A stretch of 64,000 bases of DNA from Haplodiscus bocki (lineage: Eukaryota), in assembly GCA_965655095.1 (NCBI GenBank), contig OZ296653.1, forward strand, positions 70,432,001-70,496,000, given 5' to 3'. The position numbers and the translations under genes were made by a program. Positions 16,101 to 22,019 of this stretch are shown here, one piece after another; the stretch's first letter is position 1; every line of letters begins with the position of its first letter. The notes beneath the pieces were generated by a model. It saw only the letters and a list, made by a program, of their open reading frames with translations. It had not been told where the DNA came from and did not search any database.

Positions 16101-18426
16101 TGGCTTTATCGAAGAACCGAGAGTCGACCAATGAAATAAATTCTCCGGAGAGATTCAATCCGAACACTATATCAATACATTTCACGCGCAAACGAACACA
16201 AGGTGTTAGATCAAATAATAAGAACTATGATTTCATAGACAAAATAAACAAGTTTGCTTTTACTGGTTCGAAAACTTAAAAAGTTATACCTACGAATACC
16301 AGCACTGGGGAACCAACAAAAAGATTATGGATATCATTAATACACGAGACGAAAGCCCCAAAACTCTTCAGTTAATTTTAAAAAATGACAAGATATAACG
16401 AAGCCCCGCAACCTTTGCTTTAATTCTGACAGTAACTTAAACCAAGAAGTGTGGGTATCCAGACGACTGGACAAAAGAGGAAGAGATGAAGTGGCGGCAA
16501 TTGACTAGGAAGTACTGTTTAGCAACAATGAAAGAAACAGGCGGGGCGGTGGATCTTTCGAGTTCACCGGACCAAAGGCAAGCGCGAGTACGAAGAAGAA
16601 CCGACAAGAACCTCACGAAAAAGTGTCGTGCAGCGAGGAAAGTGAATTGGCATGCCCGTCAGCCAGTTCTTTTTCTTTTAGACCTGAAAGATTACGACAT
16701 CGCTGAGAAAACATTTCAGTAAATCCAGGGCAACCACATGATTGGAAAGCCAAAAAAAGAAAGAGCCGAAGCACGAAGCGCAGGAGAATCTTAAAAAAGC
16801 CACGTTCTATTTCATGGTTGATTCAATAACTATACTCCACAAAACTTCGATTGATCCAAATTTGTTACAGCTGAAAATTTGTCTACGAAAAAATCAAAAG
16901 GAGCGAGCCACCAAAAATTTCTCCTTGGCTTTCACCGAACTCATCAAACGATTCGGTCTACTACTTGTCGGAGACAAACATGTAATACCCGAAGAGTCGA
17001 AGAAACAAGTGGTAGACACACTGCATTCGGACATCCCGGCTCGATGAGAATGCTAGCCGAGAGTAACGTCTTCTGGTGGGCCGGGATGCAAAAAGACATA
17101 CTGGAAAAGCATGCATGAGTTCCGGCAAGAATATAAAATATCAAAAACCGATGACCGCAAAAACCAGTCTACCGGTATTAACCAAACGGGAACGAGAAAT
17201 AAAATTCGATTTTCCGGTAAATTACCTCGTAAACATGTAACGTGCGAACCGTGTTTTATTATTGGAATCGATTGATATAGTAATGGGCCCGTAGTTTGGA
17301 AATGCAAATCAACCGCGGCGGAAGAAGTCATCAGTTTTCTAGATAGTTTAATCAAACTATACGGAGTCCCGGATAAAATAAAATCAAATTGAGGTTGCTC
17401 GTTCATATCCAAAGTTTATCAGGCGTTTTGCGAAACTAAAAAAAATATTGAAATAGAATATAATCCACCGAGGCTACACACTGGAACGGGGGCAGTCAAA
17501 AGTGCAAAACAAACGTTAAAAAATTGAATCATTGCCAAACTTAGATAATAAGATCGGTTTTACCGAGAGTGTAAACCTAAGTCTGCGAGTAATGCAATTT
17601 TACTTTACACACCGAATTCAAAGTGAGACCATTTGAATTACATCATGTCAGAAAAGCAAGAACTGAATCAAACAACACAGTCATAGCTAATGAGAGTAAC
17701 GTGTCCGACCGGAAAGCAATGAATGTTTCATTACCACCGAAGCAAATCCCAAATAACGTTGCGCGAAATGAGAAAAGAGAAATAACGGACCATATGAAAA
17801 TGACTTGGATAAAAAGTGCCCTGCTGTTCATCCCACAAGTCGCCGGAGAGAAAGCCGATAAGACCAGTCAGTGGAAACTTCCAATACCTGTTTAAAATTT
17901 TCGAGAGGGGAAGTCAGAAAAAATCACCGGAAGGGAAGTATGAGGAACAACCGAAAATTGCTATTGACGGTACTAAACACACGGTCCGTACAACAGAGAA
18001 AAAAATTACACCGGAAATCAATATCAATGTCGCTTCTAAATTCAGAGATCACCAAAGAAAGATGTTTTACAAAAAAAGCAGAACCTGAGAGGACCGGGTG
18101 GAAAGTACATGAGTGCTTCGGAAAACGCAAAGACAGCTGAAGAAGAAAGAACAATCTTTGCATATAAACCGAAGGTCCGGAAAATGGAAACTGATAAAGA
18201 CGATAGTCACTCTAAGAGATACAATAAATCCGACGGCAAGCAGGTACACGTAGATATCGAGGAAGTCACCGAAGATGAAACGGCACTGGCCTTGCTACTG
18301 AACAAATCGTAAGAAGAAATAAATAATAACGGTGAGACAATGGGTGGGAATGGTAATATTAATGTACGCATGTCTAACTGAACTTTTAAACCACCGGACC
18401 GATAAGGTATTGTACCATATTTTTGA

Positions 18427-18481
18427 GGTTCTCATGGCTGCCGCGCCTACGTCGCAGAACCACCTTCAGTGATGGCAACCA
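18427..18481 (+). ncRNA. Candidate compact HDV-like self-cleaving ribozyme at the LINE 5' end
   Basis: P1 GGUUCU/AGAACC; P2 UGGCUGCC/GGCAACCA (7 of 8 pairs); P3 GCG/CGC; 7-nt L3 CCUACGU; first P1 base is the first base after the TSD. Confidence 0.65.
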
Positions 18482-21400
18482 CATATTCCGATGAGAGGAG
18501 AAGAGAATCCGGGACTTCGAGAGCGGGGCGTGCTGACCCAGCGGGCGCTCCCCGACGCATCCCACCCCCATCCCCATCTGGGACCCTCAAGCAGCTACTG
18601 ATCATCATGTTGCTGCTGATGGCCGGTATCGAAGCGAACCCGGGACCGAGGAAGTTGCCGCAGTGGCCATGTGGAGTTTGCACCCAGGAAGTTCCTCACA
18701 CCTGCATCCAGTGCATCGATTGTCTCGCATGGACTCACTTTGCCTTCGCCCAACTGGACTCAAGCAATCTTCCCCACACCTGGACCTGCAAGGACTGCAC
18801 CGCGCAAGCATCCGCGCCGACCGACAGTGCGATGAGGATCCTCCAGTTTAACTGCAACGGGATAAGAGGAAAACTGGACGAAATTACTCACTACATGAAG
18901 ACAAAGAACTGTCGCGTCGCAGCTCTCCAGGAAACCTTCCTGACGGCCAAGTCCAACTTGAAATGTGAGCCGGACTTCACGCTAATCAGAAAGGATCGCA
19001 TGAAGAATAAAGGTGGAGGAGTTGCATTCCTTGTTCACCATTCACTCCAGTATCGCAACCTGGACTACACCGTCCCTGATGAACACACCGAAGCACAAGG
19101 AATAGCGATCAAAGGGGACGATGAAGTGCACCTGTACAACGTCTACATTCCCCCTGTTAGCAGCTGCTCGAGCGGATTCCGACCACAGCTGGATGAGCTC
19201 TTTGACAGTCGACACGCCATTATAATGGGAGACTTCAATGCTCACCACAGCACCCGGCGATCCACCCTTGCCGAAGACACCAGAAGCCAGCTACTGGCGG
19301 ACACACTGGACAGCAAGACATGTGTTGTCCTCAAAGGAGATGAACCTGCGAGAGCTGCCTCGAACGGAACACTAAGCTCACCGGACATCACGATAGCCAG
19401 TGCCAGCCTCGCAACCACTGCCAATTGGAGCACGGAAACAGCACTCAATTCCGACCACAATCCTATCATCGTGGAGCTCCAAATACAAGAACCTACCGTC
19501 AACTCAGAGCGCAGAAAGTACGTGAACTTCGCAAAGGCCGACTGGGACGGGCTCAAGAGTTTCATGGAGGACAGTATCCAGAACCTGCCGCAAGGAGACC
19601 TTCTTCAGAGTGAACGTGCCTTCAGGAACAAGATGCAGAAAGCCGCTCGAAAATTCAATCCAAATGGTAGAATCTCCACCGTCCAACCTGGATTCCCCAC
19701 TGCAGCAGCCAAGCTTGCGGACGAAACAAATAAACTTCGGGCTCAAAATCCGGCCAAACCACAAATAAACGAGATGAACAAGAAGATTTGTGATCTAGTC
19801 GAGGAACACCGCCGCGAAAAATGGACAGAGCATCTGGAAAAATGCGGCCTAAGAAGCGGGGTCAAGCGTCTCTGGAACACGATCAAGACGCTCTCTGGAA
19901 ATGTGAAGAAGACCGGATCACAGGCCATCACCTTCAAGAAGCCAGTCTATGACCCGAAACCGATCGCGAACAAATTCAATCAGCAATACACCCCACCGAT
20001 CAGGAAGAAAGTCGTGCAAGAAACTCGTCAGACGCTCCGGATCTTGAAGACCAGCTCCATGGAACGCGCCGTGATTACCACAATGGAGGTCGAGAGAGTA
20101 CTTCAAAGCACAAAACCTTCCGAGGCCCTCGGTCCGGATGAACTATCAACGCTGATGCTGAAACGCCTGGAACTGAAAGCCCTCAATTACATTGCGGGGA
20201 TGTTCCAGACGAGTCTCAACACGGGAGTGATACCAAGTATCTGGAAAACGGCACGTATCATCCCGTTGCTGAAAACAGGTAAACCGGATGACACTGGCAA
20301 GAGCTACCGCCCCGTCTCGCTCCTCTCCCCGCTAGTGAAGGCGCTAGAGACGCTCCTCCTTCCTACGCTGACTGAACACCTACCGATGGCTGACCATCAG
20401 CATGGATTCCGGAAGGGACGGTCCACTACGACAGCTCTCTACGAAGTCGAGTGCCACATAACAATAGGCCTCAATAAGCGCAAACCGGTTGACAAAACAA
20501 TTCTCGTTGCCTTGGACCTCCGAGCCGCTTTTGATACGGTCATTATCAACAAACTACTGAACATCATAATTGCCTCAAAGATCCCAAAGTACACCAAGCG
20601 CTGGCACTGCTCCTACCTACGAGGACGCCAGACGTATGTGGAGTTTAGAAACGCCAAGTCCACTTTTCGCAAAGTGAGAGCAGGTGCACCGCAAGGAGGT
20701 GTGCTGTCACCCATCCTGTTCAACGCCTACATGTCTGGACTGCCAACACCACCTGACGGCATCAAACTCACATCGTACGCGGACGACTGCACGTCATACG
20801 CGTCAGGGCCTACTATTCCCCCGATTTGTGAGAAGTTGAACAGCTACTTGACCACCCTGCATGAGTGGCTTGAGGAGCATGATCTGGAACTCTCCCCTGG
20901 CAAGTCCACGGCAACAGTCTTCACCACCTTCAGTCAGGAAGTGAGCATGTCACTGCCGATTAAAAACGGACAGCATACAGTACCGACCACGAAGAACCCG
21001 AAGATACTGGGAGTCACCCTGGACAGCCTTCACACATTCAACGCCCACTCCAACAACACTCTCAACAAAATAAGGAAGCGGAACTCCGTGCTGAAGGCTC
21101 CTGCTGGTTCGAGCTGGGGAAAAGACAAGGAACTCCTCACAACTACCTACAAGGCCATCTCACGGTCTGTTGTCAACTATTCCGCCCCAATCTGGACACC
21201 AGCACTTCGTGACACTCACTGGAGCAAGCTGCAGGCGGCTCAGAACTTATCTTCACGCATCATCACCGGATGCACCAAGATGACACACATCGATGAGCTT
21301 CACCGCGAGACGACACTCCTACCAGTGAAAGAACACAATACGATGCTTTCCAGACAGTTCCTTCTCCGAACTCACCAGACGAACCAGCCTAACCGACAAT

Positions 21401-21858
21401 GTAACCACACGGACCCACATCAAAGACTCATGAAGCCGACCCTAATCAGCTGCCACCAAGACTCAATCGAGCCACTACTGACGAACACCGAAGGATGGTA
21501 CAAAAGTGGCATCAAGTCGATTCATACAACCGCAGTGAGCAACACCATCAACGGATACGAACCGAACAAGGTTTTGCAGAAGATACCTCCAGTAATCAGC
21601 CCTGACGAGCGGAGACTATCACGAAGCACCAGAACAGCCCTGGCTCAGCTCCGAAGTGGCTACTGTCCTCTTTTGACCTCGTACATGAGCCGACTGGACC
21701 CGATTGTCAAGAATGAGTGCTCCCTCTGCGAATCCCAACCTCACGACACAGCTCACCTTTTCCGTACCCCACAAAAGCCGACCACTCTGGAGGCGACCAG
21801 CTTGTGGGAGAACCCGATAGAAGCGGCCCAGTTCCTCAATCTCATCCCAGACAACTAA
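18472..21858 (+). CDS. LINE polyprotein: 2A-like peptide, PHD finger, APE endonuclease, reverse transcriptase, C-terminal Zn finger
   Basis: GIEANPGP; CGVC..CIQC..H..CKDC; QFNCNG, LQET, GDFNAHH, SDH; YRPVSLLS, QHGFR, LDLRAAFD, PQGGVLSP, YADD; QLRSG...CSLC...H. Confidence 0.95.
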   Translation: MATTYSDERRRESGTSRAGRADPAGAPRRIPPPSPSGTLKQLLIIMLLLMAGIEANPGPRKLPQWPCGVCTQEVPHTCIQCIDCLAWTHFAFAQLDSSNLPHTWTCKDCTAQASAPTDSAMRILQFNCNGIRGKLDEITHYMKTKNCRVAALQETFLTAKSNLKCEPDFTLIRKDRMKNKGGGVAFLVHHSLQYRNLDYTVPDEHTEAQGIAIKGDDEVHLYNVYIPPVSSCSSGFRPQLDELFDSRHAIIMGDFNAHHSTRRSTLAEDTRSQLLADTLDSKTCVVLKGDEPARAASNGTLSSPDITIASASLATTANWSTETALNSDHNPIIVELQIQEPTVNSERRKYVNFAKADWDGLKSFMEDSIQNLPQGDLLQSERAFRNKMQKAARKFNPNGRISTVQPGFPTAAAKLADETNKLRAQNPAKPQINEMNKKICDLVEEHRREKWTEHLEKCGLRSGVKRLWNTIKTLSGNVKKTGSQAITFKKPVYDPKPIANKFNQQYTPPIRKKVVQETRQTLRILKTSSMERAVITTMEVERVLQSTKPSEALGPDELSTLMLKRLELKALNYIAGMFQTSLNTGVIPSIWKTARIIPLLKTGKPDDTGKSYRPVSLLSPLVKALETLLLPTLTEHLPMADHQHGFRKGRSTTTALYEVECHITIGLNKRKPVDKTILVALDLRAAFDTVIINKLLNIIIASKIPKYTKRWHCSYLRGRQTYVEFRNAKSTFRKVRAGAPQGGVLSPILFNAYMSGLPTPPDGIKLTSYADDCTSYASGPTIPPICEKLNSYLTTLHEWLEEHDLELSPGKSTATVFTTFSQEVSMSLPIKNGQHTVPTTKNPKILGVTLDSLHTFNAHSNNTLNKIRKRNSVLKAPAGSSWGKDKELLTTTYKAISRSVVNYSAPIWTPALRDTHWSKLQAAQNLSSRIITGCTKMTHIDELHRETTLLPVKEHNTMLSRQFLLRTHQTNQPNRQCNHTDPHQRLMKPTLISCHQDSIEPLLTNTEGWYKSGIKSIHTTAVSNTINGYEPNKVLQKIPPVISPDERRLSRSTRTALAQLRSGYCPLLTSYMSRLDPIVKNECSLCESQPHDTAHLFRTPQKPTTLEATSLWENPIEAAQFLNLIPDN

Positions 21859-22019
21859 TCCTCTCAACGGCTACAACAACAACAACAACCATATTTTTGA
21901 AAGTAATATTTAATTCCGAAAAGAATCACCGAAGCCCAGATTGATGACAATCGAGGAGATAGACTCGGACAGAGTTTACGATCTGAACAACAACAAGTGA
22001 ATAGATGGAAGGAAGGGAA

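What the first reader, a model, noticed from the sequence alone, without database searches (positions are those of the whole stretch)
18427..18481. Minimal HDV-like ribozyme fold starting exactly at the LINE 5' end and overlapping the start codon
Seen: P1 18427-18432/18456-18461, P2 18435-18442/18474-18481, P3 18443-18445/18453-18455, L3 CCUACGU, in HDV nested order. The predicted cleavage site coincides with the TSD boundary. Only 12 nt (ACCUUCAGUGAU) lie between P1' and P2', so P4 is nearly absent. P1.1 could be a single U-A pair, and the C75-equivalent seems to read U (GUGAU). The AUG at 18472 lies within the fold. Established: R2, RTE and L1Tc/Ingi elements use HDV-like ribozymes for 5' processing. 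A ~55-nt form with a 6-bp P1 would be unusually small.
Basis: partly seen in the sequence, partly recalled or inferred. Interest (0 to 1): 0.7.

Follow-up and report, generated by a model that had tools for sequence, protein, structure and literature searches.

The report
Decayed HDV-like ribozyme heading a LINE
The 55-base "minimal ribozyme" is a damaged copy of an ordinary 68-base hepatitis-delta-type self-cutting RNA that heads this family of jumping genes. This copy has lost 13 bases, including the catalytic cytosine, so it is a relic of a known device and not a new small ribozyme.

Summary
Taken alone, though, the 55-nt fold is no better than chance: 2 hits in the window against 2.1 per shuffled window, and an MFE z-score of -0.09.

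It is real because it is homologous to the 5' end of about 34 other copies of the same 3.5-kb single-ORF LINE (2A peptide, Cys/His finger, APE, RT). Those copies carry a canonical 68-nt HDV-like fold:
- P1 of 6 bp, P2 of 8 bp and P3 of 3 bp
- L3 UCUACGU
- a 7-bp P4 with a GAUG loop
- J4/2 CCAAG

Two paralogous LINE families (31-39% aa identity) begin with the same architecture and covarying helices: 16 of 24 pairs change on both sides, and 91.6% of cells are paired.

The window copy lacks 13 nt, namely the P4 3' strand and all of J4/2 including the catalytic C. It also has U>C at the first L3 base, a C·A mismatch in P2 and three C>U changes in P4. Contigs from other runs of the same organism show this same insertion without the deletion, so the loss came after insertion.

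HDV-like ribozymes at LINE 5' ends are already known. This scan has reported them before on other DNA of this genome, including what appears to be a related 2A LINE (s1-362051).

The parts
18415..18426 (+). 5' target-site duplication (CCATATTTTTGA)
   Evidence: Repeated at 21889/21890-21900, directly after the (CAA)n tail.
18427..18432 (+). P1 5' strand. G18427 is the predicted cleavage-site base and the first base of the LINE.
   Evidence: Perfect 6-bp complement of 18456-18461. 22 of 25 full-length family copies start here with unrelated flanks. P1 covaries at 5 of 6 pairs across three families.
18435..18442 (+). P2 5' strand, with the private change T>C at 18438
   Evidence: Pairs with 18474-18481 at 7 of 8 positions. 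The family form is a perfect 8 bp. Copy L008 has a compensated change in P2.
18443..18455 (+). P3 (GCG/CGC) enclosing L3 CCUACGU. The first L3 base is C here but U in the other 21 aligned sequences of families A, B and C.
18456..18461 (+). P1 3' strand (AGAACC)
18462..18475 (+). J1/4 (AC) plus the remnant of the P4 5' strand and GAUG loop, with three C>T changes (18465, 18466, 18470). The 13-nt deletion site lies at about 18475/18476. It removed the P4 3' strand, J4/2 (CCAAG, including the catalytic C) and two G of P2'.
   Evidence: Comparison with 12 aligned copies, the covariance-model alignment and the difference table. The canonical descriptor finds no hit in this copy.
18474..18481 (+). 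P2 3' strand as it now stands. Its first two G derive from the old P4 loop/stem.
18472..21858 (+). Single ORF of 1128 aa. APE spans about 18841-19470 and RT about 20296-21021. The AUG is the family's P4-loop AUG.
   Evidence: In the family either AUG8 or AUG46 is in frame with the ORF, depending on copy.
18625..18648 (+). 2A-like ribosome-skipping motif G-I-E-A-N-P-G-P, followed by a Cys/His finger
   Evidence: Translation. The same motif sits in homologues P0002-P0012. The architecture is described in PMC3708506.
21873..21889 (+). (CAA)n 3' tail of the LINE
   Evidence: The same tail is present on the internally deleted copies L032 and L033.
21890..21900 (+). 3' target-site duplication

Best explanation
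The stretch is the mutated 5' end of one copy (18427-21889) of a single-ORF, APE-type LINE family. The family's RNA starts with a canonical HDV-like self-cleaving ribozyme of 68 nt. In an intact element, a read-through transcript from upstream folds into the nested double pseudoknot, and the C that opens J4/2 catalyses cleavage 5' of G1. That releases an RNA whose first base is the element's first base. This is why full-length insertions all begin at that G, next to their TSDs. The ribozyme lies inside the coding region (AUG at nt 8 and in the P4 loop at nt 46). It may therefore also help translation start on the uncapped product, as proposed for R2 and L1Tc. After this copy inserted, one haplotype lost 13 nt (P4 3' strand, J4/2 with the catalytic C, two G of P2') and gained three C>U changes. 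With the older U>C in L3 and C·A in P2, these leave a 55-nt remnant that still shows P1, P2 and P3 but should not cleave. Shown: the fold, its covariation, the uniform 5' ends, the deletion and its polymorphism. Inferred: catalysis, co-transcription and any role in translation.
For: (1) About 34 copies in the genome match a covariance model of the 68-nt fold. Five are perfect at 104 bits; the window copy ranks 32nd at 53 bits. (2) 22 of 25 full-length copies start at G1 and 3 at G2, all with unrelated flanks. (3) A canonical descriptor hits copy L004 exactly at its first base with P1 6, P2 8, P3 3, P4 7 and J4/2 CCAAG. Folds of that quality (P2>=8, P4>=5) occurred 0 times in 20 shuffled windows. 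(4) Paralogous families B (4 copies) and C (8 copies), at 31-39% aa identity, start at their own first base with the same architecture but different helix sequences. L3 is UUUUCGU or UCUACGAU and J4/2 is CAAAU or CCAAGC. The family-A-only model finds them at E 0.008-0.05. (5) Pair counts: 91.6% of cells are paired against 26-48% when partners are slid, 16 of 24 pairs change on both sides, and 0 of 500 shuffles reach this. P2 was not part of the model, so its counts are not fitted. (6) Nested MFE folds recover P2+P3+P4 for family A and P1+P3+P4 for family B. (7) Contigs of runs X1, X2 and X4 cover the same flank and element up to 18464 at 96-97% identity, with no listed difference at 18438 or 18446. 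They then continue with the undeleted P4 3' strand and J4/2. The flank's best paralogue is only 79% identical, so these contigs are allelic. (8) Literature: the catalytic C is the invariant of HDV-like ribozymes, and a cytosine is the general acid (PMC3774820, PMC6765202). HDV-like ribozymes process R2, L1Tc, baggins and RTE (PMC6765202).
Against: No biochemical or RNA-end evidence: no RNA run of this organism was on record. No Rfam HDV-like family matches families A, B or C even at E<=10. P1.1 can only be a single U-A pair in A and C (two U-A in B), which is weaker than the G-C pairs of HDV. G1 pairs with C rather than the G·U wobble usual in HDV (from memory). Covariation rests on only three lineages from one genome, and P1, P3 and P4 in the alignment were fitted to the model. 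Logan contigs are de Bruijn assemblies, so the allelic reading rests on overlapping 31-mers and not on single long reads.
Confidence: 0.85

Rival explanations
1. The window copy is a functional, naturally minimised ~55-nt HDV-like ribozyme. It would work without P4 and use another cytosine of the 12-nt linker (e.g. C18467, 7 nt before P2') as the general acid.
For: P1, P3 and 7 of 8 pairs of P2 survive. P4 is dispensable in some natural HDV-like ribozymes, such as silkmoth R2 (PMC3774820). The copy keeps an intact 1128-aa ORF.
Against: It is the only one of 34 copies with this deletion. Another haplotype of the same insertion is undeleted. No C lies at the J4/2 position. The first L3 base, U in every other aligned sequence, is C. 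P2 is mismatched. The fold alone is at chance level, with z -0.09.
Confidence: 0.04
2. The conserved 5' fold of the family is not a self-cleaving ribozyme. It would be another 5' RNA or DNA element, such as an internal promoter, an RT-binding site or a translation-initiation structure. Transcription initiation would then set the fixed 5' end.
For: No cleavage data exist. P1.1 is weak. The start codons lie inside the fold. In L1Tc the same 77 nt are both promoter and ribozyme (PMC3383444 abstract).
Against: The order of helices, the 7-8-nt L3 with U...CG, a C-initiated J4/2 with AA, and P1' directly after P3' all match the HDV-like definition (PMC4908430, PMC3774820). They are kept in three families while the helices covary. 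A promoter would not need P1/P1' or P2/P2' complementarity.
Confidence: 0.08
3. The fold is a chance arrangement of short complementary runs.
Against: The stretch is homologous to a 68-nt fold that never arose in 20 shuffled windows at its quality. Covariation is seen across three families. It sits exactly at the first base in all families.
Confidence: 0.01

Closest known systems
L1Tc/ingi HDV-like ribozyme (L1TcRz) of trypanosomatid LINEs
   Same: An HDV-like ribozyme occupies the first ~77 nt of an APE-type, single-ORF LINE and cleaves co-transcriptionally at the element's 5' end (PMC3185411, PMC6765202). These elements also carry a 2A sequence at the N-terminus of the ORF (PMC3708506).
   Different: The host is different (an animal genome here). 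Here the ribozyme is 66-76 nt, lies inside the ORF, and in families A and B has an AUG in the P4 loop. No sequence similarity or clade membership was tested, and promoter activity is unknown.
R2 retrotransposon ribozymes
   Same: The double-pseudoknot fold is the same, the cleavage site defines the 5' end, and P1 covaries between lineages. P4 is variable or absent in some lineages while the catalytic C is invariant. A role in translation initiation has been proposed (PMC3774820, PMC6765202).
   Different: R2 has a restriction-like endonuclease, inserts in 28S rDNA and is co-transcribed by Pol I, often with a very long J1/2. The present elements are dispersed APE-type LINEs with a 2-5-nt J1/2.
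RTE and baggins HDV-like ribozymes (Ruminski et al. 2011, as summarised in PMC6765202)
   Same: They are dispersed APE-type LINEs without an evident promoter of their own, carrying a compact HDV-like ribozyme at the exact 5' end.
   Different: The protein architecture differs (2A, Cys/His finger, APE, RT, with a (CAA)n tail). The primary paper was not held in the library, so details could not be compared.
Minimal or P4-less HDV-like ribozymes (silkmoth R2; human-microbiome minimal ribozymes, Riccitelli 2014)
   Same: P4 is short or absent and the overall size is about 50-60 nt.
   Different: Those are conserved, active forms that keep the catalytic C. The window copy is a unique deletion derivative that lost J4/2.
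CPEB3 ribozyme (mammalian intronic HDV-like ribozyme)
   Same: From memory only: a 3-bp GCG/CGC-type P3, a 7-nt L3 ending in CGU and a weak P1.1.
   Different: It is not associated with a retrotransposon. Rfam's CPEB3 model does not match here.

Membership tests
HDV-like self-cleaving ribozyme (structural class) | Nested double pseudoknot in the order P1-J1/2-P2-P3-L3-P3'-P1'-J1/4-P4-J4/2-P2' | tested here: met
   Family consensus-type copies and families B and C meet it. The window copy keeps P1, P3 and 7 of 8 pairs of P2 but has no P4.
HDV-like self-cleaving ribozyme (structural class) | Catalytic cytosine at the start of J4/2 | tested here: not met
   For the window copy, J4/2 is deleted and the bases 5 and 4 nt before P2' are G and U. 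It is met in the family consensus (CCAAG) and in families B (CAAAU) and C (CCAAGC).
HDV-like self-cleaving ribozyme (structural class) | The cleavage site is the first nucleotide of P1. In retrotransposons this is the element's 5' end. | tested here: met
   G18427 abuts the TSD. 22 of 25 family A copies, 4 of 4 family B copies and 8 of 8 family C copies start at the predicted base. Cleavage itself was not observed.
HDV-like self-cleaving ribozyme (structural class) | Conserved L3 core (the G shown to matter in R2, with U...CG spacing) directly followed by P3' and P1' | tested here: met
   L3 is UCUACGU, UUUUCGU and UCUACGAU in families A, B and C. The window copy keeps CG, but its first U is C.
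HDV-like self-cleaving ribozyme (structural class) | P1.1 (1-2 pairs between L3 and J1/4) | tested here: inconclusive
   Only a U-A pair is possible in A and C, and two U-A pairs in B (sequences). One-pair P1.1 variants exist (PMC4908430 speaks of 'one or two base-pairs').
HDV-like self-cleaving ribozyme (structural class) | Helices supported by compensatory change | tested here: met
   Both-side changes occur in 16 of 24 pairs: 5 of 6 in P1, 4 of 8 in P2, 2 of 3 in P3 and 5 of 7 in P4. 91.6% of cells are paired against 26-48% when slid, and 0 of 500 shuffles reach this. Only three lineages contribute.
HDV-like self-cleaving ribozyme (structural class) | Mg2+-dependent self-scission giving 5'-OH and 2',3'-cyclic phosphate | not testable with these tools
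   No RNA runs are on record. A bench assay is needed.
Rfam curated HDV-like families (HDV_ribozyme, CPEB3_ribozyme, drz-Agam and others) | Match to a family covariance model | tested here: not met
   No HDV-like family is listed at E<=10 for the window copy, L004, L036 or L040. These models are narrow and cannot score pseudoknots.
APE-type non-LTR retrotransposons with an N-terminal 2A (Odon et al. 2013) | A single long ORF with the 2A motif (G-x-E-x-NPGP) N-terminal to APE and RT, optionally followed by a PHD finger | tested here: met
   GIEANPGP lies at 18625-18648. APE and RT are found by Pfam. Homologues share the layout. A PHD domain is called by Pfam only in relative P0016, not in the window ORF. 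Clade (CR1, L2, Rex1, Crack or Ingi) was not tested by phylogeny.

The most novel reading that the evidence does not exclude
At family level, the 66-68-nt ribozyme would serve three purposes. First, it is a self-cleaver with an all-U-A P1.1. Second, it is the coding sequence of a short leader peptide that the downstream 2A releases. Third, it is the platform for cap-independent initiation at an AUG displayed in the P4 loop, with a (GAGAGG)n microsatellite switching the ORF between the AUG at nt 8 and the AUG at nt 46.
Probability: 0.2. Interest if true: 0.5.

Novelty: new member of a known kind. Interest (0 to 1): 0.2.

Why it matters
The finding itself matters little, because the proposed 55-nt natural minimal ribozyme is a broken copy. 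Two modest points remain. HDV-like 5' processing extends to a group of 2A-bearing, single-ORF LINEs in this genome, in three paralogous families with good covariation. The polymorphic 13-nt deletion also gives a natural matched pair for a cleavage assay: the same insertion with and without P4 and J4/2.

Tried and rejected
- **Rfam scans:** E-value scans of the window copy, a consensus-type copy and families B and C listed no HDV-like family.
- **5' UTRs from other species:** Covariation therefore rests on this genome alone.
- **RNA evidence:** no RNA run is on record. Read laying could only use DNA-type contigs, which cannot show RNA ends.
- **Whole-genome model search:** model R1 returned only family A, because only 150 candidates were scored.
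- **MAFFT alignments of families A, B and C:** these misplaced family C (A1) or the 3' half of family B (A2). I used the model-guided alignment A4 instead and added P2 by hand.
- **Descriptor stringency:** my first strict descriptor missed families B and C, because of a 1-nt bulge between P2 and P3 in C and a 4-bp P2 in B. The relaxed one finds them but gives 9 hits per real window, so it is not specific by itself.
- **Family D (L051-L054):** it has only an imperfect candidate fold (a P1 mismatch and no C right after P4). I did not count it.
- **Papers not held:** Ruminski 2011, Webb 2009 and Jimenez 2015.
- **Organism names:** cluster look-ups returned none.
- **LINE clade:** not resolved by phylogeny.

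Full report
**What is at the coordinates**

The window holds a 3.46-kb LINE at 18427-21889.
- It is flanked by an 11-12-bp target-site duplication: CCATATTTTTGA at 18415-18426 and again at 21889/21890-21900.
- It ends in a (CAA)n tail.
- It has one ORF, 18472-21858, of 1128 aa. Pfam finds an APE endonuclease at aa 124-333 and a reverse transcriptase at aa 609-850.
- About 50 codons in, it encodes a 2A-type motif, GIEANPGP (18625-18648), followed by a Cys/His finger.

- P1 is GGUUCU/AGAACC, 6 of 6 pairs.
- P3 is GCG/CGC.
- L3 is CCUACGU.
- P2 is 8 positions with one C·A mismatch (18438·18478).
- Twelve nt separate P1' from P2', and the ORF's AUG (18472) lies in that linker.

**Is the 55-nt fold more than chance?**

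On its own it is not.
- The nested MFE structure of the 55 nt is an unrelated hairpin with z = -0.09.
- No Rfam family matches.

**What the family shows**

The first 300 nt of the element find 38 places in the genome.
- After orienting the copies, 22 of 25 full-length copies begin with the same G. Three begin one base later. All have unrelated upstream flanks.
- All other copies are longer than the window copy in this region. Their first 68 nt read P1 GGUUCU, J1/2 CA, P2 UGGUUGCC, P3 GCG, L3 UCUACGU, P3' CGC, P1' AGAACC, J1/4 AC, a 7-bp P4 closed by a GAUG loop, J4/2 CCAAG and P2' GGCAACCA. This is the canonical HDV-like order of helices, with a C opening J4/2.
- My canonical descriptor hits copy L004 exactly at its first base. 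Folds of that quality (P2>=8, P4>=5) occurred 0 times in 20 shuffled windows, and P2>=6 occurred 0.15 times per window.
- A covariance model of the 68 nt finds 34 copies genome-wide. Five are perfect at 104 bits.
- Nested MFE folding recovers P2+P3+P4 for this family.

**Covariation**

The protein's N-terminal 280 aa find paralogous 2A-bearing LINE families in the same genome, and I fetched their 5' regions.
- Family B (4 copies, 36-39% aa identity) and family C (8 copies, 31-32%) each begin with a G, exactly where their flanks diverge.
- Both show the same architecture with different helix sequences. P1 is GGGUCC/GGACCC in B and GUUGGC/GCCAAC in C. P3 is GCC/GGU and ACG/CGU. P2 is UUCC/GGAA and CCUUCC/GGAAGG. 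The P4 stems are longer.
- L3 (UUUUCGU, UCUACGAU) and J4/2 (CAAAU, CCAAGC) stay similar.
- The model built from family A alone finds them at E 0.008-0.05, at exactly those positions.

I counted pairs on the model-guided alignment A4, with P2 added as a pseudoknot. P2 was not part of the model.
- 91.6% of cells are paired, against 26-48% when partners are slid.
- 16 of 24 pairs change on both sides: 5 of 6 in P1, 4 of 8 in P2, 2 of 3 in P3 and 5 of 7 in P4.
- 0 of 500 shuffles reach this.

Two caveats apply. Only three lineages from one genome contribute. P1, P3 and P4 were also aligned by a model that contains them.

**What happened to the window copy**

Relative to the family form it has five substitutions and one deletion.
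- T>C at nt 12, which gives the P2 mismatch.
- T>C at nt 20. This is the first L3 base, and it is U in the other 21 aligned sequences of the three families.
- C>T at nt 39, 40 and 44, in the P4 5' strand.
- A 13-nt deletion that removes the P4 3' strand, all of J4/2 including its C, and two G of P2'.

The G-G that now starts P2' comes from the old P4 loop/stem. The canonical descriptor finds nothing in this copy, and it ranks 32nd of 34 by model score at 53 bits. It is the only copy with this deletion.

Contigs of four runs of the same organism were laid on 18100-18900.
- In X1, X2 and X4, one contig covers 18100-18464 at 96-97% identity. All listed differences are in the flank, and none is at 18438 or 18446.
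- Each of these contigs then continues for 23 nt with the family's undeleted P4 3' strand and J4/2 in place of the window's sequence.
- The flank's best paralogue in the genome is only 79% identical, so these contigs are another haplotype of this very insertion.

The deletion and the three C>T changes therefore arose after insertion. The inserted RNA most likely carried the full-length fold. The 3' 1.2 kb of the copy is 93-96% identical to at least 39 other copies, so this is a moderately old family in ordinary decay.

**Mechanism**

Inferred from established knowledge: in HDV-like ribozymes the cleavage site is the first nucleotide of P1, the core is built from L3 and J4/2, and a cytosine acts as general acid (PMC4908430, PMC6765202). 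In R2, L1Tc, baggins and RTE the ribozyme frees the element RNA from an upstream co-transcript and may help translation of the uncapped product (PMC6765202, PMC3774820).

The same reading fits here. It explains the uniform G1 start in three families. For the window copy, loss of the J4/2 cytosine predicts no cleavage.

A P4-less ribozyme would not in itself be unprecedented. P4 is absent in silkmoth R2 ribozymes, and minimal forms were described by Riccitelli 2014. Those keep the catalytic C (PMC3774820; PMC4908430).

**Coding overlap**

The family's ribozyme holds two AUGs, at nt 8 and at nt 46 in the P4 loop.
- In 8 copies the 2A frame is joined to AUG8. In 5 copies, including the window, it is joined to AUG46.
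- The switch comes from length changes in a (GAGAGG)n run just downstream.
- In the window copy the 13-nt deletion and a new UGA also close the AUG8 frame.
- In family B the P4-loop AUG is the ORF start.

**Comparison and novelty**

The closest known case is L1Tc/ingi, which combines a 5' HDV-like ribozyme with an N-terminal 2A (PMC3185411, PMC3708506). R2, RTE and baggins are the other described cases. The 2A, PHD, APE, RT layout is described for CR1, Crack and Rex1-type elements (PMC3708506). I did not place the family by phylogeny.

This scan has already reported HDV-like ribozymes at LINE 5' ends on other DNA of this genome. One of these, s1-362051, describes a 2A LINE with the start codon in P4, which appears to be a related family. 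So this is a further, damaged member of a known kind.

**Limits**
- No RNA data exist for this organism in the tools.
- Key primary papers were not held.
- Statements about the G·U wobble at the HDV cleavage site and about CPEB3's core rest on my memory, not on a tool result.

Noticed in passing
L022:1478-1500, L034 (minus strand, just upstream of the element start), L031 (minus strand): Three family copies carry a partial duplicate of about 14-19 nt from the element's own first 20 bases directly upstream of the true start. L034 repeats nt 1-19, L022 repeats nt 2-20, and L031 holds a degenerate copy of roughly nt 5-18. This may record template switching at the RNA 5' end during cDNA synthesis.
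   Followed up: no
L032 and L033 (both minus strand; the element occupies about 130-150 nt in each): Internally deleted mini-copies keep only the ribozyme plus about 20 nt, joined to the last about 40-60 nt and the (CAA)n tail. The layout resembles non-autonomous R2 SIDE elements (compare PMC3414825).
   Followed up: no
window 18490-18510 and the same place in L002-L030: A (GAGAGG)n-like microsatellite just after the ribozyme varies in length between copies. It switches the main ORF between the AUG at nt 8 and the AUG at nt 46.
   Followed up: partly
L051-L054 (family D; element start about 150 nt upstream of the ATG at about 720-768): A fourth 2A-LINE family (DIHPNPGP motif) begins with GCGGCAAAGAGAGACCG. 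It shows an imperfect HDV-like arrangement (P3 CCG/CGG, P2 GAGAGA/UCUCUC, 7-bp P4) with a mismatch in P1 and no C right after P4.
   Followed up: partly
window 18060-18426: The LINE sits inside an older interspersed repeat with at least 40 copies at 74-79% identity in the genome.
   Followed up: no
window 18100-18464: The other haplotype(s) seen in public contigs differ from the assembly by 9-14 substitutions in 365 nt. This implies high heterozygosity or distinct populations.
   Followed up: no
window 56993 (+), 35809 (-), 52947 (-): These are other hits of my strict HDV-like descriptor in the window. Their number (3) is near the chance expectation (0.9 per shuffled window), and none was examined further.
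   Followed up: no
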